A stretch of DNA of 64,000 nucleotides from Haplodiscus bocki (Eukaryota): the NCBI GenBank assembly GCA_965655095.1, contig OZ296652.1:88908001-88972000 (forward strand). The letters are read 5' to 3'. Under the pieces are notes generated by a model. It saw only the letters and a program-made list of their open reading frames with translations, was not told where the DNA came from and searched no databases. Of the stretch, positions 720 through 43,000 are shown piece by piece. Both the position numbers and the translations under genes were made by a program. Position 1 is the first letter of the stretch; each line of letters starts with the position of its first letter.

Positions 720-3700
720 TGAAAGCACAACCAATTGGACCATTTGAATCAGACATACAAAAACTGTGTTTTTGTATTGCTTTGTTTTTTAAAAATTTCA
801 TCCAAGCCCTCTCCCTGTACTTTCCACAACTTCCAAACTTTCGCAAAGTTGACTTCGCATACAGCCAAGAGTTCGTTTTGGAAAATTCTAAAATTTTTCA
901 AAAAAGCAACTGAACGCGAATTAAAGACTCGGGGCATCCAAGATGTTGTCCAGTGACTTTCTGCGGTGACTTTGACAATGGAGGTTTCCTCAAAACGTTA
1001 AAAAAATAAAATGGTTTTGCAGTCTATCAAAACGCCTTAAGATTGCGTCGTTTTTGTCGACAGCCAATGCCCGCTGGAGTTGTCATACAAATGAATGCGA
1101 ATCTCCACGCTTCTTGCAAAACTGCGTAAAGTGACCAAAATTTAGAGGCCTTGGCATGTTACTGAGACATCAGCGAACATGGTTTCTGTCCGTCGTGTCA
1201 CAGGCTTCCCAACTTGCACTTAACTAACTACGATTCTGTTAGTCCGAAAACAAAGTGCGCGTAAGCAAAAGGCCGATAGAGAGCCTGTCCGGCTATAGTT
1301 GGACATAACTAATGCTTTTTTACGAAATTGTGTCTAGGAACGCTGTAAATTGTTCGCATTGTCATGTTTGACGTGGATTTGCAATGGCAAGATTCTCAAA
1401 CCCAGTTGTAACGAGTGTTCGAACAAAGGTCTCAATCAAGAACAGCGACCTCAATAACTTCATTTTCACCAAACTTCCCAAAAAGTACGTCACCTACGTT
1501 GAACTCTCCTTTGGCATTGAAAACAATTAAACCATATGAATCAGACATACAAAGACTGTAATCTTGTATTGCTGTGTTTTTTTGTAAGTAATCCAAGCCT
1601 TCTTCCTGTACTTTTCCTAAGTTCTTAACTTTCCCAAATTTGACTTTGAATGCAGTCAAGAGATCCTTTTGGGGAATTCTATCGTTTCTCATAAATGCAA
1701 TTGGATGAGAATTAACGACCCGCGGCATTCACGATGTCCAGTCGCTTTCAGAGGCCGCGCTGACACTGGCGGGCTCCTAAGACGTTGAAAAAACGATTGT
1801 GCACTGTCTAATTGAGCCTTAAGTTTTCGTCATTTTTGTTGACAACCCATGCACGCTGCAGTTGTCAAACGAATGAACGCTAATCTCGACTTTTCTTGCA
1901 AAACTGCGTAATGTGACCAAAAGTTAGAGGCCTTGGCAAGCTACTGAGATATCAGTGAACTCGGTTTCTGTCTGTTCTGCCATAAGCTTCCCAGCTTGCA
2001 ATTACTGACTACAATTTTGTTAGTATCAAAACAAAGTCCGCGTAACCAAAAGGCTGATAAACAGCCTGCCTGGCTGTGGGCGAACATAACTTCTGTTTTT
2101 TGATGAAAATGTGTCTAGGAACGCTGTAAATTGTTCGCATTGTCATGTTTGACGTGGATTTGCAATGGCAAGATTCTCAAACCCAGTTGTAACGAAGGTT
2201 CGAGCAAAGGTCTCAATCAAGAACAGCGACCTCTTATCCTTCCTTTTCGCGAAAACTACGAAAACTCTCGTTACCTACTTTCATCTGTCCTGCGGCAATG
2301 AAAACAATTAAACGAATTTAATCAGACATACAACAATTGTGTTTTTTTGTTTAGCTTTGTTTTCTGTAAAAATTCCAAGCTGTCTTCCTGTACATTCCCT
2401 AAGTTCTTAACCTTCCCAAACTTGACTTTGAATACAGTCAGGAGATCCTTCTGGAGGTTTCTATCGTTTCTCAAAAATGCAACTGTACGCGATTTAACGA
2501 CCCGCGGCATTCAAGATCTCCAGTCGTTTTCAGCGGCGGCGTTGACACTGGACGGCTCATAAACGTTAAAAAAATACAACGGTTGTGCAGTGTATAGATG
2601 AGCTGTAAGCTTGCGTTATTTTGGTAGACAACCAATGCACGCTGCAGCTGCCAAAAGAAGGAACGCTAATCACGACTTTTCTTGCAAAAACGTGTAATGT
2701 GACCAAAACTTAGAGGCCTTGGCAAGTTACTGAGACATCAGTGAACATGGTCTTTGGCCGTTTCGTCACAAGCTTCCCAACTTGCAGTTACTCACCACGA
2801 TTTTGTTAGCTTCAAAACAAAATGCGCGTCAGCAAATGGCTGATAAATTCCTTTCCCGGCTGTGGGTGGATATATCTAATACTTTTTGAAAGTGTGTCTA
2901 GGAAAGCAGTAAAGCTTTCACACTATCATCATTGACGTGGATTTGCAATGGCAAGACTCTCTAACCCAATTGTAACGAGGGTTCAGACAAAGGTCTCATA
3001 AAAGAAAAGTGACCTCAATAACTTGATTTTGACCAAACTTCCCCAAAAAGATCGTCACCTACGTTGGTCTTTCCCGTAGCATTGGAAACAATTAAACCAA
3101 TTGAATCAGACATACAAAAACTCTGTTCTTGTATTGCTTTGTTTCTTTGTAATTAATCCAAGCCCCTTTCCTGTACTTTTCCCAACTTCCCAACTTTCGC
3201 AAAGTTGACTTAGAGTATAGCCCAGTTGTTTCGGAATTTTCTGTTGTTTCTCAAAAAACCAATTGACCGCGAATTAAAGACTTGGGGCATCCAACATATT
3301 GTCCAGTCGCTTTCAGCGGTTACCCTGACACTGCAGGCTTCCTCAAACTCTAAAATAACTAAAAATGGTTTTGCAGTCTATCAATAAGCCTTAAGATACC
3401 GTCGTTTCTGTAGACAGCCAATGCCCGCTGCAGCTGTCAAAAAAAAAATGCGAACTTCGACTCTTGTTGCAAAACTGCGTAATGTGTCCAAAACTTAGAG
3501 GCCTTGGCAAGCTACTGAGATATCAGTGAACTCGGTTTCTGTCTGTTCTGCCATAAGCTTCCCAGCTTGCAATTACTGACTACAATTTTGTTAGTATCAA
3601 AACAAAGTCCGCGTAACCAAAAGGCTGATAAACAGCCTGCCTGGCTGTGGGCGAACATAACTTCTGTTTTTTGATGAAAATGTGTCTAGGAACGCTGTAA

Positions 3701-6700
3701 ATTGTTCGCATTGTCATGTTTGACGTGGATTTGCAATGGCAAGATTCTCAAACCCAGTTGTAACGAAGGTTCGAGCAAAGGTCTCAATCAAGAACAGCGA
3801 CCTCTTATCCTTCCTTTTCGCGAAAACTACGAAAACTCTCGTTACCTACTTTCATCTGTCCTGCGGCAATGAAAACAATTAAACGAATTTAATCAGACAT
3901 ACAACAATTGTGTTTTTTTGTTTAGCTTTGTTTTCTGTAAAAATTCCAAGCTGTCTTCCTGTACATTCCCTAAGTTCTTAACCTTCCCAAACTTGACTTT
4001 GAATAAAGTCAGGAAATCCTTTTGGAGAATTCTATCGTTTCTCATAAATGCAACTGTACGCGATCTAACGACCCTTCGCATTCAAGATGTCCAGTCGTTT
4101 TCAGCGGCGGCGTTGACACTGGAGGGCTCATAAACGATAAAAAAGTTAGAACGGTTGTGCAGTGTATAAATGAGCTCTAAGCTTTCGTCTCTTTTGTAGA
4201 CAACCAATGCACGCTGCACTTGTTAAACGAAGGAACGCTAAAATGACTTTTCTCGCAAAAAAGTGTAATGTGACTAGAACTTAGAGGCCTTGGCAAATTA
4301 CTGAGACTTCAGTGAACATGGTCTTTGGCCGTCTTGTCACAGGCTTCCTAACTTTCAGTCACTGACCACGATTTTGTTAGCTTCAAAACAAAATGCGCGT
4401 AAGCAAATTGCTGATAAATTGCTGGCCCGGCTGTGGGTGCATATATCTAGTTTCTTTTGAAAGTGTGTCTAGGAAAGCAGTAAAATATTCACACTGTCAT
4501 GTTTGATGTGGATTTGCAATGGCACGTTTCTCAAACCCAATTGTAACGAGGGTTCCAAAAAAGGTCTCAATCAAGAAAAGCGACCTCACAAACTTGATTT
4601 TCACCAAACTTCCCCAAAAAGATCGTCACCTACGTTGATTTTTCCCGTGGCATTGAAAACAATTAAACCAATTGAATCAGACATAAAAAACTGTGTTCTT
4701 GTATTGCTTTCTTTCTTTGTAATTAATCCATGCCCGCTTCCTGTACTTTCCCCAATTTCCTAACTTTCGCAAAGTTGACTTCGAATTTAGACCAGAGTTC
4801 GTTCTGGACTTTTCTATTTTTTCTCAAAAAACCAATTGAACGCGAATTAAAGACTTGGGGCATCCAAGATGTTGTCCAGTCGCTTTCGGCGGTTACCCTG
4901 ACACTGCAAATTTCCTCAAAACGCTAAAAAAACTAAAATCGTTCTGCAGTCTACCAATAGGCCTTAAGATACTGTCGTTTCTGTAAACAGCGAATGCCCG
5001 CTGCAGCTGTCAAAAAAATGAATGCGAACCTCGACTCTTGTTGCAAAACTGCATAATGTGTCCAAACTTTAGCGGCCTTGGCAAGTTATTGAGACATCAG
5101 TGAACTCGGTTTCTGTCTGTCCTGTCCTATCCTTCCCAGCTAGCAGTTACTGACTTCGATTTTGTCAGTCTCAAAATAAAGTCCGCGTAACCAAAAGGCT
5201 GATGAACAGCCTGCCTGGCTGTGGGTGGACATAACTTACGTTTTTCGATGAAAATGTGTCTAGGAACGGAGTAAAAACTTCACACTGTCATGTTCAACGT
5301 GGAGGTGCTGTGGCAAGATTCCTAAACCTATTTGTAACGTGGAAATGAACAGAGGTCTCAAAGAAGAACAGCGACCTCCTTATCTTCAATTTCACCAAAC
5401 GTCCGAAAAGTACAGTCTCCTGCTTTGATCTGTCCTGTGGCAATGAAAGCAAAAAAACCAATTGAATCAAACATTCAACAACTATTTTTTTGTATTGCTT
5501 TGTGTTTTTTGAAAGTCCAAGCCCTCTTTCTCTACCCCTCCTAACTTCTTATTTTTCCCGAAATTGACTTCGAATACAGTCGAGAGCACGTTTTGGAATT
5601 TTCTTTTGTCTCCCAAATATGCAAGTGGACCCGAATTACCGACCTGCGAAATTCAAGTTGTTGTCCAGTCACATTCGATGGCGGCGCCGACTCTGAAGGT
5701 TTTCTCAGAACGCTAGAAGTTTTAAAATGGATTTGCAGTCTCTCAAAGCCTTAAGATTCCGAAGTTTTTGTAGACAGCCAATGCACACTGCAGTTGTCAA
5801 GCGAATGAATGCGAGTCTCGACTGTTCTTGAAAAATTACGTAATGTGGACAGAACTTAGAGGCCTTGGCATGTTAGTCAGACCTCGGCGAACACAGTCTT
5901 TGTCCGTCATATCATAAACAACCCAAATTGCAATTACTGACTACGTTTTTGTTAGTCTCAAAACAAAGTGCACGCAAACAAAATGCTGATAAACCGCCTG
6001 AACGACTGCCCATGGACATAACTATAGCTTTTCGAAAAACGTGTAACTAGGAACGCAGTAAATGACTCGCACTGTCATGTTTGACGTGGATTTGCAAAGT
6101 CAAAATTCTCAAACCCAGTTGTAATGAAGATTTTATTAAAGGTCTCACTCAAGAACAGCGACATCCATTTCTTCATTTTCACCAAACGTCTGAAAAATTT
6201 CGTCACCTTTTTTGATTTGTCTTATGGCAATGAAAACAGTTAAGCCAATTGAACTCGACATACAACAACTTTGTTTTTTTTTTGCTTTGTTTTTTTTGTA
6301 AACAGTCCAAGCCCCTTCTGTATTTATTTAACTTCTCAATTTTCCCAAACTTGACTTCGGATACGGTGAAGAGCTCGTTTGGGAATTTTCTATTGTTTCT
6401 CAAAGATGCAACCGGACACGAACCAACGATAGACGACATTCAAGATGTTGTCCACTCTCCTTCGACGGCGGCGCTGGCACTGCAGTGTTCTTCAGAAAGC
6501 TAAAAGCTTTAAAATGGTTCTGCAGTCTCTCACTATGCCCTCAGATTTCTCCGTTTTTGTAGACTGCCAATGCACGCTGCAGTTGTCAAACCAATGTTTG
6601 CGAGTCTCGACTGTTCTCGCAAAACTGCGTAATGTGACCAAGTTTTAGAGGCCTTGGCAAGTTAGGGAGACATCAGCGAACGCGGACTTCGTCCATCTTG

Positions 6701-9700
6701 TCACAAGGTTCCCAACTTGCAACTATTGACAACATTTTTGTTAGCTTCAAAACAAAATGCGCGTAAGCAAAAGGCTGATGAATCGCTCAACCGGCTGTGG
6801 GTGGTCTTAGCTGAGGTTTTTTGTTGAAAGAGTGTCTGGGAACGCAGTAATTATCTCACACTGTTTTGTTTGATGTAGAATTCCCAAGCCAAGATTCTCA
6901 AACCTAGTTGCAACGAGGGTTTGAACAAAGCTCTCCATCTTGAACAGTGACCTCCATACCTCCATTTTCACCAAACGTCCAAATATTCTCATCGCCTAGT
7001 TCATCTGTCCTCTGTCAATGAACACAATTGAACCAGTTGAATCAAACATACAACAAAATTGTTCTTTTTCAATTCCATTGCTTTTTATAAAAAATTCCAA
7101 GCCCCCTTCCTTCACTTTCCTTGAAATCTCAATTTTCCCAAACATGTTTTCGAATATAGTCGAGTTCGTTTTGGAATTGAATAATGTTTCTCAAAGATGG
7201 CACTGGACGGGAACCAACGAACAGAGACCTTCAAGATGTTGTCCAGTCTTAAGGGACGGCGGCGACGACACTGAAGTGTTCCTTGGAAGGCTGAAATCCT
7301 TAAAAAGGATTTGCAGTCTGTCAAAAAGCCTTAAGATTTCGTAGTTTTTGTACACAGCCAATAAACCCTGCAGTTTTCAAACGAACGAAAGAGAATCTCG
7401 GTTCTTCCTGCAAAAACACGTAATATGGCCAAACTTGGAGACGTTGGCAGGTTAATGAGACATTAGCGAATTCGGTCTTTGCCCGTCCTGTCACTTGTCA
7501 GAAGTTTCCGAACTTGCAAAGTTTGACAACATTTTTCTTAGTTTGCGCGAGAAAAATACTGCTGAACCGGCTGACCGGCTGTGGGTGGACACAACTAATG
7601 GTTTTCGATGAAAATTTGCCTTGGAACGCTGCTAAAAGTTCGCATTGTCATGTTTGACGTAGATTTGCCAAGTCAAGATTCTCAAACTTATTTGTAATGA
7701 AGATTTGAACAAAGGTCTCTTCCAAGAACAACGATATCCGTATCTTCATTTTCACCAATCGTCCTAAAAATCTCATTGCCTACTCTCATATGTCCTGTGG
7801 CAAGGCAAACTACTAAGCAAGATGAATCAGACATACAACAAATTTTTCATTTTTGAATTCCTTTGTTTTTTTTGTAAATAATCCAAGCCTTCTTCTTTCA
7901 CTTTCCTTGAGTTCTCAATTTTCCCGAACTTGATTTCGAACACAATAAGGAGCTCGTTTTGGAACTTTCTATTGTTTCTCAAAATTGCAACTGAACGCGA
8001 ATTATCAACCCGCGAAATTCAAGATTTTCGTCCGGTCTGCTTCGACAGCAACGCCGACGCTGAAGGATTCCGCAAAACGCTCAAAAATTTTGAATGGTTT
8101 TGCAGTCTGTCAATAGGTTTTAAGATTTCTTCGTTTTTGTAGACAACCAATGCACGTTGGAGTTCTCAAACGAAGGAAATGGAATCTCGACTGTTGCTGC
8201 AAAACTACGTAATGCGACCAAATATTAGATGCCTTTGCAAACTAATGAAACATCAGTCAACTCGGTCTTTTTCCATCCTGTCACAAGCTTCCAAAACTGC
8301 CAATTTTCACTACAACTTTGTTTGTCTCAAAACAACGTGCGGCTAAGCAAAGTGCTGTTGAATTACCTGACCAGCTGTGAGTGGACATATATAATGATTT
8401 TTGATGAAAGTTTGTCTTGGAACAAAGTCAATCTTTCACATTGTCATATTTGACGTGGAAATGCAATGGCAAGTTTCTCAAACCTAGTTGCAACGAGGCT
8501 TTGAACAAAGGTCTCAATCATGAACAGGGACCTCCCTATCTTCATTTTCACCAAGCGTCCAAAAAATCTCGTCGCTTACTTTGGTCTGTCCTATGTCAAT
8601 GAAAAGAATTTTACCATTTGAGTCGAACATACATCAACTGTGTTTTTGTATATTGTTTTGTTTTTTTTTGTAAATTTTTCAAGCTTTCTTCCTGTATTTT
8701 CCCCAACTTCTTAACATTCCCAAACTTGACTTCGAATACAGTCAAGAGCACGTTTTGGAACATTCTATTGATTCTGAAAGATAGAACTGGACGTGAACTA
8801 ACGACCCACGACATTGAAGAAATTCAGTCGCTTCCGATGGCGCCGTTGACACCGGAGGGTTCCCTAAAATGCTAGGAGAGAAGTAAATCAATTTGCAGCC
8901 TCTCAGTAAGCCCAAACATTTCGTTGGTTTCAAGAACAGCCAATGAACGCTGCAGTAGTCAAATGAATGAATGCGAATCTCGACCCCTCATGCAAAACTG
9001 CGTAATGTGACCAAACTCTAGAGGCCTTGTCAAGTTACCGAAACATCAGCGAACACGGTCTTCGTGCGTCCCTTCACTAGCTTCCCAACTTGTCAATACT
9101 GACTACAAATCTGTAAGATTCAAAACAAAGTGCCCGAAAGCAGAAGGCTGATAAACTGCCTACCCGACTGTGGACGGAAATAAATAATGTTTACTGATAA
9201 ATTTGTGTAGAGGAACGCAGTAAAGATTTCACGCTGTCATGCTTGAAGTGGAAATGCACAGCCAAGCTTCTCAAACGTAATTGTAACGACGAGTTGAACA
9301 AAATTTTCAACGAAGAACAGCGACCTCTATATCATTATTTTAACCAAAAGTCCAAAAAATGTCGTCACCTACTTTGATCTGTCCCCCTGGCAATGAAAAA
9401 ATATACACTAACTGAATCGAACATACCATAGTGATTTTTCATATTGCTTTCTTTTTTTAAAGATTGCCTTCTTCCCGTGGTTTCCCTAACTTCCAATTTT
9501 TTCCAAACCTGACTTCGAATACCCACGAGAACTCGTTTTGTTATTTTCTATTGATTCTCAAAAATACAAGTATTGACCCACGACATTCATGATGTTGTCC
9601 AGTTGCTTTCGATGGCAGTCCCGAGACTGGAGTGTTCTTCAAAACGCTAAGAAATTTTAAACAGTTTTGCAAACTCTCACTCAGACTTAAGGTTTCTTCC

Positions 9701-11631
9701 TCTTTGTAGACAGCCAACGCACGCTGCAGTTGTCAAACGATTGAAACGGAATCTCGGCACTTCTTGCAAAACCAAGTAGTGTGACCAAAATTTGGAGGCC
9801 TTGGTAGGCTGAAGAGACATCAGCGAACTCGGTCTCTGTCCGTCCTTTCACAAACTTCCCAATTTGCAATTTTTGACTACACTTTTTCTAGTCTCAAAAA
9901 AAAGTGCGCCGGAGGAAAATGCCGCTGAACCATCTAACCTGCTGTGGGTGGACACAACGAATGTTTTCCGATGAAACTTTGTCTTGGAACGCAGTCGAAA
10001 TTTCACACTGTCATGTTCGACGTGGAAATGCAGTGGCAAGTTTCTCACACCTAGTTGCAACGAGGTTTTGAACAAAGGTCTCAATCATGAACAGCGACCT
10101 CCTTATCTTCATTTCCACCAAACATCCAAAAAATCTCGTCACTTACTTTGGTCCGTCCTACGTTAGAGAAAAGAATTGAACAATTTGAATCAAACATGCA
10201 TCAACTGTGTTTATGTTTTTTGCATTGTTTTTTTTTAAATATTCCGAGCCTTCTTCCTGTGCTTTTCCTAACTTCTTAACGTTCCCAAACGTGACTTCGA
10301 ATACAGTCAAGGCCTCGTTTTGAAACAATCTATTGATTCTCAAAAAGACAGCTGGACGTGAATTATCGACATTCAAGAAGTCGAGCCGCTTTCGATGGCA
10401 GCGCCGACACCGGAGGTGTCCTCAAAACGCTAAAAAAGTGTAAATCATTTCCCAGCCTCTCAATAAGCCCAAACATTTCGTTGGTTTCAAGAACAGTCAA
10501 TGAACGCTGCAGTAGTCAAATGAATGAATGCGAATCTCGACCCCTCATGCAAAACTGCGTAATGTGACCAGACTCTAGATGCCTTGGCAAGTTAGCGAGA
10601 CATCAGCGAACACGGTCTTTTTCCGACTTTTCATTAGCTTCTCAACTTGCAATTACTGTCTACAATTTTTTTAACCTCAAAACAAATTGCCGTAAGCAGG
10701 AGGCTGATAGTTTGCCTACCCGGCTGTGGACGGAAATAAATAACGTTTTTTGATAGAAATGTGTCGAGGAACGAACGTATTAAATTTTTCACTCTGTCAT
10801 GTTTGACGTGGAAAAGTACTGCTAAATATCCCAAACATAATTCTAACGAGGAGTGGAACAAAATTCTCAATCAAGAACAGTGACCTCTATGTCATCATTT
10901 TCACCAAACGTCCAAAAAATCTTTCACATATTTTGATCTGTCCCATGGCAATGAAAGCAATTACACTAAATGAATCAAATATACAACAGTGATTTTCTCT
11001 TGCTTTGTTTTTGTAAACACTCCAAGCCCTACCGCTGTACTTTCCTTAACTTCTATATGTTTCCAAATCTGACTTCCAATACAGACAAGAGCTCGTTTTG
11101 TTAATTTCTATTGATTCTAACAAAAAACAACCGGACTTGAAGTACTGACTCACGACATTGATGATGTTGTTCACTGGATACCGATGGCGTTGCCGACACT
11201 GGAGGATTTCACAAAACCTTCAAAAGTTTTTAATGGTTTAGCAGTCTCTCGAAAAGCCTGAAGTGTTAATCGTTTTTTTAGAGAGCCAATGCAAGCTGCA
11301 GTTGTCAAACGAATGAATGGGAATCCGACTTTTCCTGCAAAACTGCGTAACGTGACCAAATTTTAGAGGCCTGGACAAGTTACTGAGACATCAGCAAGCT
11401 TTTTCACTTTCCGCCCTGTCACAAGCCTCCCAACTTTCAAATACTCACCACCATTTTGTTAGCTTCAAAACAAAGTACGCGTGAAGAAAAGGTTGACAAA
11501 CCGCCTGCCCGGCTGTTGATGACTATTGAATAATTTTTTCGGTGAAAATATTTCTGAGAAAGCAGTCAATTTTTCACACTGTCATGTTTCATGTGGAATT
11601 GCAAATGCAAAAATATCAAACCTAGCGGTAA
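720..11631. repeat. Macrosatellite block 1: ~14 head-to-tail units of ~786 bp (short, SET-core-deleted monomer)
   Basis: Anchor GAATCAGACATACAA or variants at ~746, 1538, 2320, 3103, 3890, 4673, 5463, 6251, 7039, 7823, 8620, 9414, 10187, 10972 (spacing ~773-797). Recurrent homologous short ORFs in the track (MPRVxNSR..., 749/1432/2322/3893/6203/8611). Confidence 0.97.
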
Positions 11632-11704
11632 CTAGAGACCGGTCAATGGGGGCTCTAGGATTTGCGATAGTGTCGGCGAAAAGCGGGCAGCCCCACCCGC
11701 CGAC
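11632..11704 (-). other. Candidate element terminus: CTAG end plus GC-rich hairpins
   Basis: The satellite stops at ...CCTAGCGGTAA (11631), then CTAG at 11632-11635; the minus strand reads ...GGTCTCTAG|T. Inverted repeats CTAGAG/CTCTAG (11632-37/11653-58), GTCGGCG/CGCCGAC (11672-78/11698-704) and GCGGG/CCCGC (11683-87/11696-700). Confidence 0.5.
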
Positions 11705-16315: not shown

Positions 16316-16491
16316 TTGCTTTTAAACTATTGGAGGAGTGATTGAGCATGAAAAACGTTTTACTGCTTGTTACAAATAATGAAGAAAAAAATGTTGTTTT
16401 TTTAAACGCATTGAGAGAAAGGTCAGTTGATGCTATTGTTAAACGCAACAATGTTTAATTAATGGTAACTGTTGCAATGAAGTTTTGATTT

Positions 16492-30199: not shown

Positions 30200-30550
30200 T
30201 TACATTTTTTGATTTTGATTTTTCAAGTTTGAATTACAAAAACAGGAACCATTGAAACGGTTTCTATGGCAATTAATTTCGGTTGGTGGCCTACTGTGTA
30301 AATTTATTTCACAATTTTGTATTTTGGCTGCGCATGCCGCAGGTGTTCTCGGTGCAGGATTTTTTCTTCGGTGAAAAGAAAAGTCATTTCCCCCCAGGAT
30401 TAGCATGAACACATCAAAGTCTTGATGAAAGATATGATTCTCAAGGTCAATGGCTTTCCATCCACCTCTGCTACTAATGGTGACTGGGTATACAAAAATA
30501 GAGTGTGGAACTGTTTGCAGGTGGCTGTCGCCAAAGAATAGAAATTTCAT
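30200..30550 (-). pseudogene. SGNH/GDSL hydrolase-like small ORF
   Basis: MKFLFFGDSHL (block I GDS), SRGGWKA (block II G), DVFMLILGGNDF (block III GxND). The C-terminus appears frameshifted. Confidence 0.75.
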
Positions 30551-31638: not shown

Positions 31639-31676
31639 CACACACACACACACACGCACACACACACACACACACA
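31639..31676. repeat. (CA)n microsatellite
   Basis: About 19 CA units with one CG interruption, within a CA/GA-rich stretch. Confidence 0.95.
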
Positions 31677-33261
31677 AAAGAGAGAAGATGAGAGAGATAG
31701 AACAAATTCTCAGCAGGATCAAATTCAAACGCAGCAGACATTCACTTCTGAAGGAGCGAGAAGTACGTCAAACAAATCACGCACACACAGCTCCGATGAA
31801 TCACTTCAAAATCAAAAATGCTGCAAAAAAACATAGTCAGAGTTGACAATGAATATCTAAGTACCAAAAAAGATTAGATCAGGCGGAATCATAGCGAATA
31901 AAAACCCTGCTAACAAAGCGATTTTTCCTGACACAAAACAACACCGGCTTGATTGTGCCTTGATGGCCGTTTTAAAAAGTGAGAATGTTTTCATCAATTT
32001 CAACCACAAATATTTATTTTGAAGTAAAGGCTTGTAAATTAGGAACTTTTTAACATCACAAACGTGAACTCCAGCAAAAAGACAAAGCTGAAAAAACGAC
32101 GATGAAGAAAGCAGCATTTTAAGGGCTAGAGCGTGTGGTCATCGGTATTTGAAGGACGCAAAGTCTCGAGTGTATCTTTTAAATTTGAAAAAACCGAGGC
32201 TATTCATTTGCTGACCTGCAGCCCAACTTGTGTTACCTGCTGTGATCAACAAGAGTTTTCTAGTTTGTGTCCTCGGGTGTTTCTGAACTGCGTTTTTGTC
32301 AAACATTGAGGCTTTTTAATTGCATTTTTGAAGTCATGTGGTTGAAGCAGATGGTTCCTTAGGCTAGCACTACTAATTTTTCGGAGAGTTTCAATTTTTT
32401 CCAGATTGTTTTTTTGTAGTTAACATTCCGAAAACAGCAGTTTCATGTTCAGCTTAACAAAATTAACACAGACTGATTCTCTTTTGCCCTATTAAAAAAA
32501 CAACGAAATAACATAAATCACGCAAACAATGTTTTCAAAACTTCGGTCAACTCTAATGATTATTACTTGTAACAAAGACAAAACAAGACACTTTTTTGCT
32601 CGAAAACTAACTCAAACCCCACAACATATCCCGGTTCGGTTTTTGGACTGGTTTTTTTTCTTGTCAACAGATTGTGGGGGAGCTTCACAACAATGACCAC
32701 CGGTACAAAACTTCGGCCAAATTATACAATGAAAAGTTAATGCTTGATAAAACTTTTTCAATATACCGACAATTTTAAAAACGCTTGAAGACTTGCCAAG
32801 TCGATTTGCTGGGAGGAAAATTGGCCAAGGTTTGCCCACTGTGAAGCTTATTTGAAAAAAATGAGCAGGAAGGGCAAAGATTTGAACCCAGAAATCGGAA
32901 AATTGACAAAATTATCAATTTCTCACTGAGTTTCTGCTCAAAAGACATCAAACACCTCAAAAGACGCGTATTTAAGTGCTGAACAGATCTGTACTCCCAT
33001 AAGGAAGCGCTCCATGCAACCCCGAGGAAGTTACAGGCTGTGAAAGTCAAATATCTGAAAAAGGGCCAAAATTTGGGTCGGAAATTAAGTTTTTGGTCAG
33101 CAAAGACCCAAAAGTTCTGAAAACTGCAGGAAAAAATTCTTATATCGTCGATTTCAGGCCGCATGCAAAATTTAGGGCGAATCGTAATGCTAGGCATCGA
33201 GATCTTCAGAAATAGAGCCAAAATCGCCTAGTACTTTTAAGACAAATGAATGCAAGTCTCG

Positions 33262-36200
33262 ACTGATGTTGTAAAACTACGTGATGTGACCAACACTCAG
33301 AGGCCAAAGCAAATTTCTGAGACGTCAGCTAAGTCGCTCATTGTCCGTCCTGTCACAAGCTCCCCAACATACAATTACTGACTACGACTTAGTTAGTGTC
33401 TCAAAACAAAGTGCGCGTGAGCAAAAGGCTGATAAACCGCCTGACTGGCTGTGAATGGACATAGCTAAGGTCTTTTGATGAAAATTAGTCTCGGAACGCA
33501 GTAAATATTTCACACTATCGTGCTTGACATTGAATTGCAATAGCAAGATTCTCAAACCTAGTTGCAACGAGGATTTGAACAAAGGTTTCATTCATGAATA
33601 GCGACCCCCATATCTTCAATTTCCCCAAACATCCAAAAAAACTCGTCACCTAATTTGATCTTTTCTATGTCAAAGAAAAAAATTAAACCTTTTGAACCAT
33701 ACATGCATCGATTGTGTTTTTGTATATGGCTTTGTTTTTTTTGTAAATAATCCAAGCCTTCTTCCTGTGTTTTCACAACTTCCTATTTTTCGCAAAGTTG
33801 ACTTCGAATACAGCCAACAGCTCGTTTTGGTTCAATCTATTGATTCGGAAAAACGCAACTGGACAAAAATCAACGACCCAAGACATTCAAGATGTTTTCC
33901 AGCCGCTATCGACGGCGGCGCCGACACTGGATTTATCCTCAAAACGCTCAAAAATTTTAATTGTTTTTGCAGTCTCTGATGGAGCCTCAAGATTTCGTCG
34001 TTTTTTGTAGACAGCCAATGCAGGCTGCAGTTGTCAAACGAATGAATGCGAATCTTGGCACTTCTGGCAAAACAATGTAAGTGACTAAAACTTAGAGGCC
34101 TTGGCAAGTTAAATACACATCAATGAACACGGTCTTTGTCCGTCTTGTCAAAAACTTCCGAATGTTGCATTTACTGTCTTTTGCTTTTAGGCGTCGAAAC
34201 AGAGTGCGTGTAATTAAAAAATTGAAAAACCACTTACGCGTCTGTAGGTGGTCATATCGAATATTTTTGATGAAAGCATGTCTAGGAACGCAAAACGTAA
34301 ATTACAATGGCTTGTTTTACAAGGAAGCACAAAAGAAAGAACTTCAACCTTGGTCGTAAAGAGGATTGGAACAAAGAGTCTCAATCAAGAGCAGCGACAT
34401 CCCTATCTTCATTTTCGCGAAACTTCCGAGAAAAGTCTCCACCTATTTTGAACTGTCTTATGGAATTAAACACAACCAAACCAACTGAGTAATACACCCT
34501 TAATAATAATGTCAATGTTGTCTTTGTGTTTGCTGCCAAAGTTGTTTGGCCTTTTTAGCGCCCTTAAGGATGCCTAAAATGGCAATGGCTCATTTAGCGG
34601 GCATCGATGACAACTAGGTTGTCCTTTTTTTGAGGGAGATTCATGCAGCACATTTGCTGGCCGATGTTTCAGGCTAAAAACTGTCCTTTACAGCGTTCAA
34701 GTTAACGTCCGTAGTAATCAATGACAACTATTTCTTTTTATTTTGCTTCATTTGCATTAAAAACTTCCAAGCGCTGTTCCTGTAACTTCCCTAACTTCTA
34801 AACTTTCCGAAACTTGACTTCGAAAGTTGACAAGGGCTCGGTTTGGGATAGTTTGTTGTTTCTCAAAGTTGCAACTGAGCGCGAATTAAGGACCATTGGA
34901 ATTCAAAATGTTTTTCAGTCCCTTTCGACGGCAACGCTTACACTGGAGGTTTCCTAAAGACGCTATAAAGTTCAAAATGTTTTTGCAGTCTCTCAATAAG
35001 CCTTAAGATTTCGTCGTTTTTTTAGACAGCCCAGGCACGCTGCAGTTGTCAAACGAATGAATAGGAATCTCGATTCTTCTTGCAAATCTACTCATTGTGA
35101 CCAAACCGTAGATGCGTTGGTAAGTTTTTGAGATATCTGCGAACACAGTCTTTGTCCGTCCTGTCGCAATTTCCCAACTTGAAATTACCGCACCGTGGCT
35201 TTGTCAGCGTCGAAACAGAATGCGAGTAACCAAGAGGTTGATTAACTGGCTGCCCGGTCGTAGGGGCTGAAACTTTTGTTTTTTGATAAAAGTGTATGTA
35301 GGAAAGCAATCAATATTTCACACTGTTATGTTTGACGTGAAATTCGAAAAGCAAGATTCTCAAACCCAGTTGTGACGAGGATTTGCAAAAAGTCTCCACC
35401 AACAACAGCGACCTCCAAACCAATTTTTTTTCACCAAACTGTCAAAAAAAATCGTCACCTCCTTTGATCTGTGCTATGGCAATGAAAACAATTAACCCAA
35501 AGGAACCAAACATGTAACAACTGTGTTTGTTTGAAGTGCTTTGTATTCCTGTAAAACAACCAATCCCTCTTCCTGTACTTACACAAAGTTCGAAACTTTC
35601 TTAAACTTGACGTCGACAACAGTCAAGAGCTCGTTTTGGAACGTTCTCTGTTTTCTCAAAAATGCAACTGGAAGCGAATTAAAGACCCGCGACATTCTAG
35701 ATATTGTCCAATCGCTTTTGACGTCAGCGCTAACACTGGAGGTTTCCCAAGAGCGCTAAAAACGTTCTAAAGATTTTGCAGTCTCTCAATTAGCCCTAAT
35801 TTTTGTCGTTTCTAGGTACCGTCAAAGCACGCTGCAGTTGTTGAACGAATGAAGGTTAATCTCGATTCTTCTGGCGAATGTACTCAATGTGATTAAAAGT
35901 GATCAAACGAAAGATGCATTGGTAAGTTACTCAGATATCTGTGAGCACGGCCTTTGTCCGATCTGTCGAAAGCTTCCCAACTTGAAGTTACTGAACCGTG
36001 GTTTTGTTAGCATCGAGACAGAGTGCCAATAACCAAAAAACTGATTAACCGGCTTTACGGTTGTAGGAGGCTAAATCTAATGTTTTTTGATGAAAGTGTG
36101 AGTTGGGAAGCAGCAAATAATTCACACTGTCATGTTTGACGTGAAATTGGAAAAGCAAGATGCTCAAACCTAGTTGTAACGAGGATTTGAACAAAGGTGT

Positions 36201-39200
36201 CAACCAGGAACAGCGACCTCCAAATCAATTTTTTACCAAACCGCGAAAAAATAACATCAACTACTTTAACCTGTGCTTGCAGTTACTGCACCGTGATTTT
36301 GTTGGCGTCGAAGCGGAGTGCGTGTAACCAAAAAGCTGATTAACTGACTGCCCGGTTGTGGGGGGCTGCACCCAGTTGTGGGTGCTCTAACTAATGTTTT
36401 TGATGAAAGTCTCTGGAGGAAAGCAGTAAATATTTGACACTGTATTATTTGACATGAAATTGGAAAAGCAATATTCTCAGACCTAGTTGTAATGATTATT
36501 TGAACAAAGGCCTCAATCAAGAACAGCGACCTTCATATAATTTTTTTCACTGGGAATCCCAAGAATTTCGTCACCACATTTCATCTGTCCTATGGCAAAA
36601 AAAAATTAACCCAATTGAATCAGACATACAACAACCGCGTTTGTTTTCATTGCTCTGTTTGTTTTTGGTTCATAATCGAAGCCCTTTACCTTTAATTTCT
36701 CCAACATCCTAACTTTCCCAAACCTGACTTGAAAAACACTCAAGACCTCGTTTTTGAAACTCTATTGTTTTCAAAATGCAACTGGACGCAAACCAACGAC
36801 CAGAAACTTTCAAGATGTTGTCCAGTGTTTCTGGACGGCAGCGACGACACTGAAATGTTCCCTGAAATGCCTAAAACTTTAAACTGGCTTTGCAGTCAGT
36901 CAAAAAGCCTTAAGTTTTGGTCATTTTTATAGAAAGCCAATGCAAGCTGCAGTTGTCAAAAGAGTGACTGCGAATCTCGACTCTTTCTGTAAAACTATGC
37001 AATGTGACCGAAACTTAGATGCCGTAATAGTTACTGAGACTTCAACCAACACGGTCTATGTCAGTCCTGTAACAAATTTCCCCACCTGAAATTAATGATT
37101 ACGAAATTGTTAGCTTCAAAACAAAGTGCATGGATTGAAAAGACTGATTGAGTGCCTGCCCAGTTGTAGGTGCCTATATCTATTGTTTTTTGATGAAACT
37201 GTGTCTAGGAACGCGGTAAGAAAGTCACACGGTCTTGTTTGACGTGAAGATGGAAGGGCAGGCTTCTACACCTAGTTGTAACGAGGATTTAAATAAAGGT
37301 GTCACTCAAGAAAAGCGAATTCCGTATCTTTCTTTCCACTGAAGTCCCAAAATTTTCCTCCCCAACTTTGATCTGTCCTATGGCAATAAAAACAATTAAC
37401 TCAGCTGAATCAGGCATCCAGCAACTGTGTTTCGTTATAAAGATTTGTTTTTTTGTACTTAATCCAAGCCCTCTTCCTGTACATTCCCAACATCCTAATT
37501 TTCAAAAACTTGACTTCGAATACACTCAAGAGCTCCTTTATAAAACTTTTTTGTTTCTCAAAAACGCAACCGGACGTAAACCAATGACCCGCGAAATCCA
37601 AGATGCTGTCCAGCTGCTTTCGACGGCGCCGCTGACACTGGAGTTATCTTCAAAACGCTCAAATTTTTTTTTTGATTTTGTGGTCTCGAATGAGCTTCAA
37701 GGTTTCGCCTTTTTTTGTAGACTGCCATTGTAGGCTGCAGTTATCAAACGAATGAATGCGAATCTTGGCTTTTCTTGCAAAACCATGTAAGTGAATAAGT
37801 ATCAGAAGCCTTAGCAAGTTGCAGACACATCAGTGAACATTGTCTTTGTCCGCCCTGTCAAAAACTTCCCAATTTCGCATTTACTGTCCTTTATTTTAGG
37901 GCGTCAAAACAGACTGCGTGTAAGCAAAAGAATGGTAAACCGCCAGCCTGAATGTAGGTGGACATACCGAAACGTTTTTTGATGAAATTATGTTTAGCAA
38001 CTGATGTTGTAAAACAACGTAATGTGATCAACAATCAGAGGCCATAGCAGGTGTCTGAGACGTCAGCTAAGTCGGTCATTGTCTGTCCTGTCACAAGCTC
38101 CCCAACATACAATTACTGACTACGACTTAGTTAGCGTCTCAAAACAAAGTGCGCTTGAGCAAAAGGCTGATAAATCGCCTGACTGGCTGTGGATGGACAT
38201 AACTAATGTCTTTTGATGAAAATTAGTCTCGGAACGCAGTAAATATTTCACACTATCGTGCTTGACATGGAATTGCAGTAGCAAGATTCTCAAACCTAAT
38301 TGCAACGGGGATTTGAACAAAGGGCTCAATCATGAACAGCGACCCGCATATCTTCAATTTCCCCAAACATCCAAAAAACGTCGTCACCTTATTTGATCTT
38401 TTCTATGTCAAAGAAAAAAATTAAACCTTTTGAACCATACATGCATCGATTGTGTTTTTGTATATGGCTTTTTTTTGTAAATAATCCAAGCCTTCTTCCT
38501 GTGTTTTCACAACTTCCTATTTTTCGCAAAGTTGACTTCGAATACAGCCAACAGCTCGTTTTGGTTCAATCTATTGATTCGGAAAAACGCAACTGGACAA
38601 AAATCAACGACCCAAGACATTCAAGATGTTTTCCAGCCGCTATCGACGGCGGCGCCGACACTGGATTTATCCTCAAAACGCTCAAAAATTTTAATTGTTT
38701 TTGCAGTCTCTGATGGAGCCTCAAGATTTCGTCGTTTTTTGTAGACAGCCAATGCAGGCTGCAGTTGTCAAACGAATGAATGCGAATCTTGGCACTTCTG
38801 GCAAAACAATGTAAGTGACTAAAACTTAGAGGCCTTGGCAAGTTAAATACACATCAATGAACACGGTCTTTGTCCGTCTTGTCAAAAACTTCCGAATGTT
38901 GCATTTACTGTCTTTTGCTTTTAGGCGTCGAAACAGAGTGCGTGTAGTTAAAAAATTGAAAAACCACTTACGCGTCTGTAGGTGGTCATACCGAATATTT
39001 TTGATGAAAGCATGTCTAGGAACGCAAAACGTAAATTACAATGGCTTGTTTTACAAGGAAGCACAAAAGAAAGAACTTCAACCTTGGTCGTAAAGAGGAT
39101 TGGAACAAAGAGTCTCAATCAAGAGCAGCGACATCCCTATCTTCATTTTCGCGAAACTTCCGAGAAAAGTCTCCACCTATTTTGAACTGTCTTATGGAAT

Positions 39201-40060
39201 TAAACACAACCAAACCAACTGAGTAATACACCCTTAATAATAATGTCAATGTTGTCTTTGTGTTTGCTGCCAAAGTTGTTTGGCCTTTTTAGCGCCCTTA
39301 AGGATGCCTAAAATGGCAATGGCTCATTTAGCGGGCATCGATGACAACTAGGTTGTCCTTTTTTTGAGGGAGATTCATGCAGCACATTTGCTGGCCGATG
39401 TTTCAGGCTAAAAACTGTCCTTTACAGCGTTCAAGTTAACGTCCGTAGTAATCAATGACAACTATTTCTTTTTATTTTGCTTCATTTGCATTAAAAACTT
39501 CCAAGCGCTGTTCCTGTAACTTCCCTAACTTCTAAACTTTCCGAAACTTGACTTCGAAAGTTGACAAGGGCTCGGTTTGGGATAGTTTGTTGTTTCTCAA
39601 AGTTGCAACTGAGCGCGAATTAAGGACCATTGGAATTCAAAATGTTTTTCAGTCCCTTTCGACGGCAACGCTTACACTGGAGGTTTCCTAAAGACGCTAT
39701 AAAGTTCAAAATGTTTTTGCAGTCTCTCAATAAGCCTTAAGATTTCGTCGTTTTTTTAGACAGCCCAGGCACGCTGCAGTTGTCAAACGAATGAATAGGA
39801 ATCCCGATTCTTCTTGCAAATCTACTCATTGTGACCAAACCGTAGATGCGTTGGTAAGTTTTTGAGATATCTGCGAACACAGTCTTTGTCCGTCCTGTCG
39901 CAATTTACCAACTTGAAATTACCGCACCGTGGCTTTGTCAGCGTCGAAACAGAATGCGAGTAACCAAGAGGTTGATTAACTGGCTGCCCGGTCGTAGGGG
40001 CTGAAACTTTTGTTTTTTGATAAAAGTGTATGTAGGAAAGCAATCAATATTTCACACTTA
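33262..40060. repeat. Recent segmental duplication in the array: ~33262-35330 repeated at ~38000-40060
   Basis: Near-identical ORF pairs offset by 4734-4738 (33382/38120, 33798/38532, 34307/39041, 35088/39822). Confidence 0.9.
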
Positions 40061-43000
40061 TGTTTGACGTGAAATTGGAGAAGCAAGTTTCTCAAACCTA
40101 GTTGTGACGAGGATTTGAACAAAACTCTCAACCAAGAACAGCGACCTCCCAATCATTTTTGAACTAAACTGCCAAAAAATCTCGTCACCTACTTTGATCT
40201 GTGATATGCAAGTTAGATTGCTTTGTCTTTCTGTAAAAAAACAAGCCCCTTTTTTTACTTACCTTAAGTTCAAAACTTTTCCAAACGTGACTTCGAAAAC
40301 AGTCAAGAGCTCGTTTTGGAACTTTCTCTGTTTTCTCAAAAAAGCAACTGGAAGCGAATTAACGACCCGCGACTTTCTTGATAATGTCCCATCGCTTTCG
40401 ACGCGAGCGCTAACACTGGAGGTTTCCCGAGAACGTTAAAAACGTTCTAAAGCTTCTGTAGTCTCTCAATCAGCCCTAAGTTTCGTCGCTTTTAGGAGCT
40501 ATCAATGCACGTTACAGTTGTCAAACGAATGAAGTTGAATCTCGATTCTTTTTGCGAATCTAGTCGATGTGACCAAACCACACATGCGTTGGTAAGTTTT
40601 TGAGATATCTGCGAACACAGCCTTTGTCCGTCCTGTCACAAGCTTCCCAACCTGAAATTACTGCACCGTGGCTTTGTTAGCTTCGAAACAGAATGCGAGT
40701 AACCAAGAGGTTGATTAACTGGCTGCCCGGTCGTAGGGGCTGAAACTTTTGTTTTTTGATAAAAGTGTATGTAGGAAAGCAATCAATATTTCACACTGTT
40801 ATGTTTGACGTGAAAGTCGAAAAGCAAGATTCTCAAACCCAGTTGTGACGAGGATTTGCAAAAAGTCTCCACCAACAACAGCGACCTCCAAACCATTTTT
40901 TCCACCAAACAGTCAAGAAAACTCGTCACCTACTTTGATCTGTGCTGTGGCAAAGAAAACAATTAACCCAAATGAACCAAACATGTAACAACTGTGTTTT
41001 TTTAAGTGCTTTGTCTTCCTGTAAAACAACCAAGCCCTCTTCTTGTACTTACCCAAAGTTCAAAACTCTCCCAAACATGACTTCGAAAACAGTCAATAGC
41101 TCGTTTTGGAACATTCTCTTTTCTCTCAAAAACGCAACTGGATGCGAAATAACGACCCGCGACGTTCAAGATGTTGTCCATTCGCTTTCGACGGCGGCAG
41201 TGACACTGGAGGGTTCCTCAAAACGCTAAGAAGTTTGAAATACTTTGGCAGTCTCTCAATAAAACTTAGGTTTCCGTCGTTTTTGTAGACAACCAATGCA
41301 CGCTGGAGTTGTCAAACGAATAAATGCGAATCCCGACTCTTCTTGTAAAACTACGTGGGCTGATCACAAATTAGAATATTTGGCACGTTACTGGGACCTC
41401 ATCGAACACGGTCTTTGTCTGTCCTGTCGCAAGCTTCCCAGCTTGCATTTAATGACTACGTTTTTGTTAGCTTCAAAACAAAGTGCGCGTAAGCAAAAGG
41501 CTAAAAAACTGCATGCCCGGCTGTGCGTGGACATGTTTTTTGATGAAAACGTGTCTCGGAATGCAAAAAGTAAGTCACACTGTAAAAAGTAAGCAAGACT
41601 AACAAACTTGGTTGTGAGGCTGACTTGAACGAAGGTCTCAATTGAGAGCATCGACATCGATATTTTCGTTTTCATCCTACTTTCAAAATATTTTTGTCAC
41701 CTACTTTGATCAGTCTTGTTGCAATTAATACAATTTAACCAATCAAATCAATCATCCTGAGGATCATTGTTTTTGTCTTTGCTGCGATTGTCGTGTGGCT
41801 TATCTGCCGCCCTTGAGGTTGCTCACAGGTGCAAGCAAACCTTTCGCGGGTATCGATAACGATTACGTCATCATCCCTTGGCATGGTCCTAACGTTTGCA
41901 GGAAGAGTCTTGCAGCGCGTTCCATAGCTGGTGTTTCCGACTAAGAGTTATCAATTATAGCGTTCGAGGAAACGTTCGTGGTAACCAACCACAACTCTTT
42001 TTTTATAATGCTGTGTTTTAATGGGAAAACTTCAGGGCCTCTTCTTGTTTTTTCCCTAACTTCTAAAATTTTCCAAACCTGACTTCCAATAGAGACGAGA
42101 CCTTGTTTTGGAATGTTCTATTGTTTCACAAAAACGCAACCGCACGCGAAACAGCGACTTATGACATTCAAGATGTTGTCCAATGGTTTTCGACGCCAAC
42201 TGTGACACTGGGGTATGCCTAAAAACGTTTAAATGGTCAAAATGCTTTTGCAGTCCATCAAAAACCCAAAATTTTGTCGTTTCTGTAGACAGCCAATGCA
42301 CGCTGCAATTATCGAAGGAAGGAATTCAACTCCCGATTCTTCTTGCGAATGTATTTAATGTAACAAAAAACTGAGGCGCTGGCACGTTTTTGAGACATCT
42401 GCGAACATGGTTTTCGTCCGTCTTGTCAAAAGCTTCCTAACTTTTCTTTTACTGTCTGCTATTTTTGAGGCTTCAAAACAGAGTTTGTGTAACCAAAAAA
42501 CTGATGAACCCCTCGTCCAGCTGTAGTTAGACACCACTAGTCTTTTCCGATGGAAGTGTGTATAGGAACGCAGAAAAATAACCACACTGTCTTGTGTCGC
42601 ATGGAATTGCAGAAGCAAAGTTTTCAAACCATCTTGTGACGATAATTTGAAGGAAGGTTTCATTCAAGAACAGCGACATCCATATTTTTTTTCACCATAC
42701 ATCAAATATATCTCGCTACCTATTTTGATCTGTCGTATGGAAAGGAAAACTTTTAATCCAAATGCTAGAGACACCATTAAAAATGTTGTCTTCGTGATTG
42801 CTGCAATTGTCTTGTGGCTTATGTACCGCCCTTAGAGATACTTATGATGGCAAGTACATCTTTTGCGGGCGTCAAAAACGACTAAGTTTTCATCCCCTTG
42901 CATGGCCTTATCCTTTGGAGGAAGACTCATGCAGCACGTTTCTTAGCTGGTGTTTCCGACGAAGAGCTATCAAATATTTTGTTCGAGGATACGTTCTTGG

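What the first reader, a model, noticed from the sequence alone, without database searches (positions are those of the whole stretch)
720..41700. Short monomer = long monomer minus a shared ~230 bp deletion of the SET catalytic core, with a spatial gradient
Seen: long units read GAATCAGACA-CC[~230 bp]-ACAACTGTG (e.g. 53391-53631), while short units read GAATCAGACA-TACA-ACAACTGTG. The missing segment encodes YHG through IDA/CxCH/RYISH/ANT. All ~14 units in block 1 and most units at 33-41 kb are short; 41.7-56.9 kb is almost all long. Inference: the extra segment completes a protein domain, so long is ancestral and short is derived. One catalytically dead variant then expanded and took over one side of the array. 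This gives a rare way to polarise satellite evolution, and could reflect selection against dosage of an active methyltransferase (speculative).
Basis: partly seen in the sequence, partly recalled or inferred. Interest (0 to 1): 0.7.

Follow-up and report, generated by a model that had tools for sequence, protein, structure and literature searches.

The report
Old SET-gene-fragment repeat with deletion variant
This is a very old, decayed tandem repeat built from a roughly 1-kb piece of a SET-type methyltransferase gene. About half of its units carry one and the same 233-bp deletion of the enzyme's core, a neat but ordinary case of a deletion variant spreading through dead repeat DNA.

Summary
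**Observation: confirmed.**
- The window holds one tandem array in two blocks, 716-11632 and 33242-56938.
- Units are about 1025 bp (long) or about 786 bp (short) and only about 69% identical to each other.
- 21 junctions in the window, plus one stray copy on contig C1, show the same deletion of about 233 bp at the same alignment columns.
- 17 units keep the segment.
- One other short unit (48218-48971) has a different, independent deletion. One odd junction (40211/40215) is the edge of a 2.2-kb segmental duplication.

**Polarity (long ancestral): supported.**
- Long units are colinear with the SET exon of an intact-looking cupin-SET gene on contig C604.
- A solo long-type copy on C6 passes Pfam SET.
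- The extra segment has no separate copies in the genome.

**Single origin: likely, but short units are not a clean clade.** The unit at 46456 and its C1 copy are recombinants, and the 33-47 kb zone is mosaic.

**The selection idea is not supported.**
- Nearly all long units carry stops.
- Codon positions diverge equally (0.29/0.30/0.31).
- No unit holds a full open frame.

Verdict: a gene-fragment-derived macrosatellite, an inert relic and a known kind. This scan has already noted other gene-fragment satellites in this genome. A related, younger array family lies on C1 at 22.94-23.03 Mb.

The parts
716..11632 (+). Array block 1: 14 short (about 786 bp) units, all with the shared deletion junction. 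The first units show a local two-unit periodicity (units 2002 and 3573 are 94% identical).
   Evidence: nhmmer profile coordinates; alignment; identity matrix; left edge read
11633..33241 (.). Non-array DNA separating the two blocks. It contains a 3.87-kb tandem duplication (14643-18513 = 18508-22378, 99.95% identical) and one sub-threshold Helitron_like_N match (23549-24091, minus strand). The repeat phase does not continue across it (profile position 192 on the left, 894 on the right).
33242..41447 (+). Array block 2, short-dominated and mosaic part. It has 6 short-type junctions and one long unit present twice (34171-35182 and 38905-39916), because 33262-35482 was copied to 38000-40211 (97.3% identical). 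It also has truncated units at 35989-36276 and 37881-38000.
41449..56938 (+). Array block 2, long-dominated part. It holds 15 units of about 1025 bp that keep the segment, among them unit 48218 (with its own, different deletion) and the terminal unit 56103 (truncated at profile position 748), plus one recombinant short unit.
   Evidence: tree
49299..49534 (-). Example of the long-specific segment (profile positions about 331-561). On the minus strand it encodes the decayed SET core from YHG through IDA, CxCH, RYxSH and AANT.
   Evidence: It has no separate copies elsewhere in the genome.
49183..49503 (-). Best-preserved SET-tail open frame in the array (106 aa). It gives a Pfam SET match of 15.4 bits, below the 22.4-bit cut-off.
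46456..47250 (+). Isolated short unit inside the long domain. It is a recombinant: long-type (34165-like) on the left, short-type from about 40 bp before the junction (46787) onwards. Its closest relative is the stray copy on C1.
48218..48971 (+). A 755-bp unit with an independent 272-bp deletion (profile 388-659, junction at 48604). It is sister to long unit 49999 (87.5% identical).
   Evidence: The junction is bridged by contigs from two samples.
53930..54214 (-). Example of the part of the monomer homologous to the cupin (JmjC-like) exon 2 of the C604 gene (32% identity over 96 aa). It is present in both short and long units.
   Evidence: tblastn

Best explanation
The array is an ancient, non-coding macrosatellite.

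**What the unit is.** The roughly 1025-bp unit is a decayed fragment of a gene of a small cupin(JmjC-like)-SET family, read on the minus strand. It runs from the C-terminal part of the cupin exon, through the linker, to the end of the SET domain.

**What happened (inferred).**
- The fragment was amplified head to tail.
- Early in the array's history one unit lost about 233 bp covering most of the SET core, with at most 2-3 bases of microhomology at the junction.
- That variant spread by unequal crossing-over and local duplication. It now forms one contiguous domain, later split by about 21.6 kb of foreign DNA.
- The undeleted form persists in the other domain.
- Crossing-over or gene conversion between the two forms produced mosaic units near the border and moved the junction onto a long-type background at least once.
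- All units have since drifted neutrally to about 69% identity.
- Nothing indicates that the array makes a protein, or that the deletion mattered for fitness.

**Shown here:** the structure, the shared junction, the polarity, the mosaicism and the lack of coding constraint.

**Inferred only:** the spreading mechanism and the great age.
For: **Structure and junction**
- Identical junction columns in 21 window units and in the C1 copy.

**Polarity (long is ancestral)**
- tblastn of the intact C604 SET exon gives single HSPs that run across the left breakpoint in long units, for example residues 24-105 on 51529-51284.
- The C604 exon scores 42 bits against Pfam SET and aligns to EHMT1 over the NHS..PN and DYG motifs.
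- The solo long-type copy on C6 scores 26.6 bits, above the cut-off, with the match spanning the breakpoint position.
- At 6 of 8 scorable diagnostic sites C6 carries the long-type allele.
- The 236-bp segment exists nowhere else on its own.

**Phylogeny and recombination**
- 20 of 22 short units sit in one starred clade (97/95), with unit 48218 nested among long units.
- Mosaicism is shown by half-unit trees and diagnostic sites.

**No coding constraint**
- Stops in 15 of the 16 long units scored.
- Equal divergence at codon positions 1, 2 and 3.
- Uniform divergence of about 0.30 along the unit.

**Copy census and comparison**
- The array is confined to this locus, with only two stray copies found by DNA search, on C1 and C6.
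- A related gene family forms arrays of internally deleted units on C1, so the behaviour recurs.
Against: - Individual window units do not reach the Pfam SET cut-off (15-16 bits against 22.4). The SET identity of the window units therefore rests on their homology to C6 and C604 and on visible motifs.
- Short units are not monophyletic in the ML tree. AU tests on the half-unit alignments reject a single clade. Single origin rests on the junction identity plus the demonstrated recombination.
- C6 may be an early dispersed copy rather than a true outgroup.
- No RNA data were available, so transcription is untested.
- The junction at 46787 is not bridged by an independent contig.
Confidence: 0.85

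Rival explanations
1. The short form arose several times independently, at a deletion hotspot inside the unit.
For: - The ML tree needs 2-3 changes of the short/long label.
- AU tests on the half-unit alignments reject one clade.
- Other deletions do overlap the same region: unit 48218 here, and the exon-4 deletions in the C1 arrays.
Against: - All 22 junctions lie at the same columns and share the junction-specific T after GACA.
- The one clear outlier (46456 plus the C1 copy) carries short-type diagnostic alleles from about 40 bp left of the junction onwards and long-type alleles further left. That is the signature of recombination, not of a new deletion.
- The one demonstrably independent deletion (unit 48218) has different end points.
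Confidence: 0.06
2. Short is ancestral, and the long form arose by insertion of a 233-bp piece.
For: None beyond the bare length difference.
Against: - The segment completes a SET domain that is colinear with the intact C604 exon and with the C6 copy.
- It has no independent copies in the genome and no target-site duplication or terminal repeats.
Confidence: 0.01
3. The deletion variant spread because selection disfavoured many active SET methyltransferase copies, or because intact SET copies are toxic.
For: Deletions removing the NHS motif region recur in the related C1 arrays (exon-4 residues 59-86 are missing in the 1211-bp units) as well as here.
Against: - Long units show no coding constraint.
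- Almost all long units carry stops.
- The longest minus-strand ORF in the array is 113 aa.
- The monomer lacks exon 1 and any evident start.
- The spacing between the YHG and IDA motifs is 128 nt in C6 and in unit 53069, against 129 nt in C604. This hints that the frame was already broken at amplification.
- The SET region is about 40% of the unit, so overlapping deletions are expected by chance.
Confidence: 0.04
4. The array has a present-day non-coding role, such as a heterochromatin or centromere component or a source of small RNAs against the gene family.
For: - All units point one way.
- A 1.19-kb piece was inserted elsewhere with A-rich ends, which could mean a + strand transcript was once reverse-transcribed. 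This is weak.
Against: - 69% identity between units means no homogenisation of the kind functional satellites usually show.
- At 27-38% amino-acid identity to the nearest intact gene there is no nucleotide complementarity to target.
- No RNA run holds the sequence.
Confidence: 0.04

Closest known systems
Gene-containing macrosatellites, such as D4Z4 with the DUX4 retrogene (PMC12376486; DUX family arrays, PMC13558733)
   Same: Kilobase-sized units repeated head to tail, each unit derived from a protein-coding sequence.
   Different: - D4Z4 units are nearly identical and keep an intact, regulated ORF.
- Here units are 69% identical, hold only a gene fragment, are riddled with stops and show no coding constraint.
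Satellites seeded from parts of other sequences (rDNA spacers, transposon fragments), with subfamilies spread by unequal crossing-over and gene conversion (review PMC5615363)
   Same: - Origin from a fragment of a pre-existing functional sequence.
- A variant unit defined by an indel expands locally into its own domain.
- Exchange between variants occurs at the border.
   Different: - The seed is a cupin-SET gene fragment, so an intact paralogue can polarise the indel.
- The array is exceptionally diverged and low in copy number (about 40 units at one locus).
Arrays of internally deleted copies of the C604-like cupin-SET gene at C1:22.94-23.03 Mb in the same genome
   Same: - Same gene family.
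- Several unit types differ by internal deletions, including loss of SET exon residues 59-86.
- Unit types sit in separate domains.
   Different: - The C1 arrays are much younger (74-82% DNA identity to the C604 gene) and retain intron sequence and exon 1.
- The window's array is far more diverged (27-38% amino-acid identity to C604), and its units lack exon 1 and the exon 3/4 intron.
SET-zinc finger-tyrosine recombinase (Crypton-like) elements and recombinase-fragment satellites noted earlier by this scan in this genome
   Same: SET-domain sequences and gene-fragment satellites are common in this genome.
   Different: - Own-genome protein searches with the monomer's or C6's SET piece returned only the array, C6, C604 and one weak C7 hit.
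- The monomer also carries the cupin exon of the C604-type gene, not zinc fingers or a recombinase.

Membership tests
SET domain (Pfam PF00856) derived sequence | Profile match above the curated cut-off (22.4 bits) | tested here: inconclusive
   Window pieces score 15.4 and 16.2 bits, below the cut-off. The homologous solo copy on C6 scores 26.6 bits and the intact C604 exon 42 bits.
SET domain (Pfam PF00856) derived sequence | Conserved motif order: GxG..., YxG, IDA, (R)xxNHS..xN, GEE..xYG | tested here: met
   Aligned minus-strand translations of the long units show LVVIDAR, CxCH, GRYISH, AANT and VGDEIxWTYGE in order. C604 aligns to EHMT1 over the NHS..PN and DYG motifs.
Satellite / macrosatellite DNA | Many head-to-tail copies of one unit at a locus | tested here: met
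   About 40 units in one orientation over about 35 kb of array.
Satellite / macrosatellite DNA | Homogenised units (concerted evolution) | tested here: not met
   Median pairwise identity is 0.69. Only a few recent local duplications reach 85-99%.
Functional tandem gene array | Intact open reading frames under purifying selection | tested here: not met
   The longest minus-strand ORF is 113 aa. There are 1-7 stops in 128 SET-region codons in 15 of the 16 long units scored. Codon-position divergence is 0.287/0.298/0.306.
Insertion element (the extra 233 bp as a mobile insert) | Independent copies elsewhere, terminal repeats or target-site duplication | tested here: not met
   The only hits are inside the array itself. 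The junction has no duplication.
Transposon-derived satellite (SET-recombinase Crypton-like source) | Monomer colinear with the element's gene | tested here: inconclusive
   No such element was retrieved by own-genome searches with the SET pieces. The monomer is colinear with the cupin-SET gene on C604 instead. No direct comparison with a Crypton-like copy was made.

The most novel reading that the evidence does not exclude
The cupin(JmjC-like)-SET gene family may be a lineage-restricted, array-forming selfish gene or cargo of an unrecognised mobile element.
- Only 7 fragmentary relatives of its cupin exon were found among 1.84 billion representative proteins.
- It has repeatedly spawned tandem arrays, on C5 here and over about 90 kb on C1.
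- In these arrays, variants lacking the SET catalytic motif repeatedly take over whole domains.
- That would point to a real cost of intact SET copies, or to a replication mechanism that favours internally deleted units.
Probability: 0.08. Interest if true: 0.6.

Novelty: new member of a known kind. Interest (0 to 1): 0.3.

Why it matters
Because the repeat unit descends from a recognisable protein domain, an intact paralogue can serve as an outgroup. It tells which of two satellite variants is ancestral. This is rarely possible for ordinary satellites.

Here that approach works and gives a clean small example of the following sequence:
- one deletion;
- local spread of the variant;
- exchange between the variants at the border;
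- occasional ectopic insertion of array pieces elsewhere.

It adds a data point on how gene fragments turn into satellite DNA in a large animal genome. It does not reveal a new mechanism or a function.

Tried and rejected
- Tandem Repeats Finder found nothing because the period exceeds its 500-bp limit and units are only about 70% alike. I used BLAST, MAFFT and nhmmer instead.
- Pfam on ten minus-strand ORFs of the array gave only two sub-threshold SET hits.
- Pfam on ten ORFs of the 11.6-33.2 kb spacer gave one sub-threshold Helitron_like_N hit and no helicase. The 'Helitron RepHel' reading of that region is therefore not verified here.
- The representative-protein search with the C604 cupin exon returned only 7 short fragments. 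The one contig looked up was a 762-bp metagenome scaffold. The family's full architecture in other organisms stays unknown.
- The protein atlas only confirmed 'SET'.
- PDB search with C604 exon 1 gave nothing.
- I looked for a poly-A tail or target duplication at the C6 solo copy and saw none.
- I considered the 739-bp unit at 39919 as a secondary deletion and rejected that. Its junction coincides with the end of the 2.2-kb duplication.
- No RNA runs hold the sequence, so expression could not be tested.
Comparisons used individual copies and profile models only.
Full report
**What is there**

The window is G000:C5:88908001-88972000 of a 1.5-Gb genome in 6626 contigs. Earlier scan notes call it an animal, reportedly a coral. 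I did not verify this.

A long unit used as a BLAST query hits 43 head-to-tail pieces on the + strand, in two blocks, at only 66-74% identity. A profile HMM built from the long units places every piece in a common coordinate system of 1025 positions:
- Block 1 runs from about 716 to 11632.
- Block 2 runs from 33242 to 56938.

The array does not continue into the 20 kb to the left or the 10 kb to the right of the window. Whole-genome DNA search finds only two other pieces:
- 1.19 kb on C1 (115.087 Mb);
- a solo unit of about 970 bp on C6 (51.654 Mb).

**The observation**

Alignment of all units phased at a shared anchor shows that short units lack the same block of columns. The junction reads ...GAATCAGACAT|ACAACAACTG... 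in every case. Long units read ...GAATCAGACAC-CCTCA...(about 233 bp)...CAACC-ACAACTG.... In profile coordinates the left part ends at 325-331 and the right part resumes at 562-573.

Counts:
- 14 such junctions in block 1.
- 7 in block 2 (33704, 35512, 36626, 37419, 38442, 40983, 46787).
- The C1 copy has the identical junction.
- 17 units keep the segment.

Two 'short' units are something else:
- Unit 48218-48971 has a different deletion (profile 388-659). It is 87.5% identical to its long neighbour 49999.
- The junction at 40211/40215 is the end of a 2.2-kb segmental duplication (33262-35482 copied to 38000-40211, 97.3% identical).

- short: block 1 plus 33.2-41.4 kb;
- long: 41.4-56.9 kb.

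Short-read contigs from two samples of one study match 45.5-51.0 kb at 99% or more and bridge the 48604 junction. The 46787 junction is not bridged by a listed contig.

**What the unit is**

Read on the minus strand, long units show decayed SET motifs in the right order: LVVIDAR, CxCH, GRYISH, AANT, VGDEIxWTYGE. Single window pieces stay below the Pfam SET cut-off (15-16 bits).

Two relatives make the identification firm:
- The homologous ORF of the C6 solo copy scores 26.6 bits.
- A search of the genome with the C6 ORF led to an intact-looking gene on the small contig C604. Its last exon scores 42 bits against SET and aligns with EHMT1 over the NHS..PN and DYG motifs.

The C604 gene has four ORF pieces. 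The second has a cupin/JmjC-like look (LLKPG...PSGFAHAVLTL), with only a weak cupin-fold Pfam hit.

tblastn of these pieces against the window shows that every unit, short or long, contains a homologue of the exon-2 piece (29-54% identity). Long units also contain a homologue of exon 4 (27-32%). The monomer is therefore a gene fragment: the C-terminal part of the cupin exon, the linker, and the SET domain to its end. It lacks exon 1.

The cupin exon is rare. Only 7 short fragments match it among 1.84 billion representative proteins.

**Polarity**

- The exon-4 HSPs run uninterrupted across the left breakpoint in long units, for example residues 24-105 on 51529-51284, where the breakpoint lies at 51363/51364.
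- The Pfam SET match of C6 likewise spans the breakpoint position.
- The deletion removes the equivalent of C604 exon-4 residues about 1-79. That covers YHG, IDA, CxCH and the NHS motif, and leaves only the GEE..YG tail.
- The 236-bp segment has no separate copies in the genome and no duplication at its ends.
- At 8 short/long diagnostic sites that can be scored in C6, 6 carry the long allele.

Long is therefore ancestral and short is derived.

**One origin or several**

- On 728 shared columns, 20 of 22 short units fall in one starred clade (97/95), with long units 44437 and 45463 attached to it.
- Unit 46456 and the C1 copy instead group with long units 34165/38899 (97/93).
- An AU test does not reject a single short clade on the full data (p 0.167). 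It does for the parts left (p 0.039) and right (p 0.002) of the junction.
- The half-unit trees and 15 diagnostic columns explain this. Unit 46456 and C1 carry long-type alleles up to column 480 and short-type alleles from column 545 (about 40 bp before the junction) onwards.
- Units 35185, 39919, 40658, 44437 and 45463 are mosaics too.

I read this as one deletion event whose junction was later moved by crossing-over or gene conversion in the border zone. The alternative of recurrent identical deletions is not excluded formally, but the linked alleles speak against it.

**Age and constraint**

- Median pairwise identity is 0.69 overall: 0.71 among short units, 0.69 among long units and 0.685 between the two classes. 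The deletion is therefore almost as old as the array.
- Divergence is uniform along the unit, about 0.30.
- Ts/Tv is 0.91 and CpG observed/expected is about 0.95.
- In the SET frame, long units differ equally at codon positions 1, 2 and 3 (0.287, 0.298, 0.306).
- 15 of the 16 long units scored have 1-7 stops in 128 codons.
- No minus-strand ORF in the array exceeds 113 aa.
- The spacing between the YHG and IDA motifs is 128 nt in C6 and in unit 53069, against 129 nt in C604. This hints at a frameshift that predates amplification (weak).

There is thus no sign that long units were ever active genes inside the array, and no basis for the dosage-selection idea.

**Related loci**

- The C1 stray copy (1.5 units, short type, 80% identical to unit 46456) is an insertion into one copy of an old dispersed repeat. 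Paralogous copies elsewhere are 'empty' at that point, and an A-rich motif occurs at both ends. Pieces of the array have therefore been pasted elsewhere.
- Separately, C1:22.94-23.03 Mb holds about 90 kb of arrays made from internally deleted genomic copies of a C604-like gene (74-82% DNA identity, intron sequence retained).
  - These have at least three unit types (about 1211, 1184 and 924 bp) arranged in domains.
  - Two of these types lack exon-4 residues around 59-86.
  - Array formation with deletion variants is therefore a recurring habit of this gene family, and not only of this locus.

**Comparison with what is known**

- Gene-bearing macrosatellites such as D4Z4/DUX4 (PMC12376486, PMC13558733) share the architecture, but their units are homogeneous and coding.
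- The general picture is textbook (review PMC5615363): satellites seeded from fragments of other sequences, variants spread by unequal crossing-over, and homogenisation by gene conversion.
- A full-text search found no paper that combines 'macrosatellite' and 'SET domain'.
- This scan has already reported other gene-fragment satellites and SET-recombinase elements in the same genome. My own-genome searches did not connect the present monomer to those elements.

**Verdict**

- The polarity inference is right.
- The 'clean clade' expectation fails because of recombination.
- The selection speculation is unsupported.

This is a new example of a known kind, with modest interest.

Noticed in passing
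G000:C1:22939500-23030600 (loci L033, L034, L035): About 90 kb of tandem arrays built from internally deleted genomic copies of a C604-like cupin-SET gene (74-82% DNA identity). At least three unit types (about 1211, 1184 and 924 bp) sit in separate domains. Two of the types lack SET exon residues around 59-86.
   Followed up: partly
G000:C604:33332-35404 (L030:5332-7404): An intact-looking four-piece gene that joins a JmjC/cupin-like part to a SET domain. Its cupin exon has only 7 fragmentary relatives among 1.84 billion representative proteins. Upstream lies a tandem repeat with a period of about 188 bp (L030:2990-4400).
   Followed up: partly
L016:4647-5832 (G000:C1:115087647-115088832): A 1.19-kb short-type piece of the array is inserted into one copy of an old dispersed repeat. 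Paralogous repeat copies (L036-L038) are empty at that site. The A-rich motif GAAAAAAAGT occurs at both ends, which could be a target duplication or a poly-A remnant.
   Followed up: partly
L015:4642-5612 (G000:C6:51654642-51655612): A solo long-type unit of almost exactly one monomer length. Its ends fall where the gene fragment begins and ends. It keeps an 82-aa open SET piece that passes Pfam. No poly-A tail or target duplication was seen.
   Followed up: partly
window 14643-22378: A 3.87-kb segment is duplicated in tandem at 99.95% identity inside the spacer between the two array blocks. It is far younger than anything in the array.
   Followed up: no
window 11632/11633 and 33241/33242: The repeat phase does not continue across the 21.6-kb spacer (profile position 192 on the left, 894 on the right). 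The split of the array was therefore not a simple single insertion. Only a sub-threshold Helitron_like_N match supports a Helitron reading of the spacer (23549-24091, minus strand).
   Followed up: partly
window 716-56938: CpG observed/expected is about 0.95 in the array, against 0.80-0.83 in the spacer and the right flank. The array shows no sign of long-term germline CpG methylation decay, despite 30% divergence.
   Followed up: no
G000:C11:32.90-34.17 Mb and G000:C3:70460631-70468029: Further broken relatives of the cupin exon: four on C11 at about 60% identity, three of them with stops, and three copies spaced 3558 bp apart on C3 at 33% identity.
   Followed up: no
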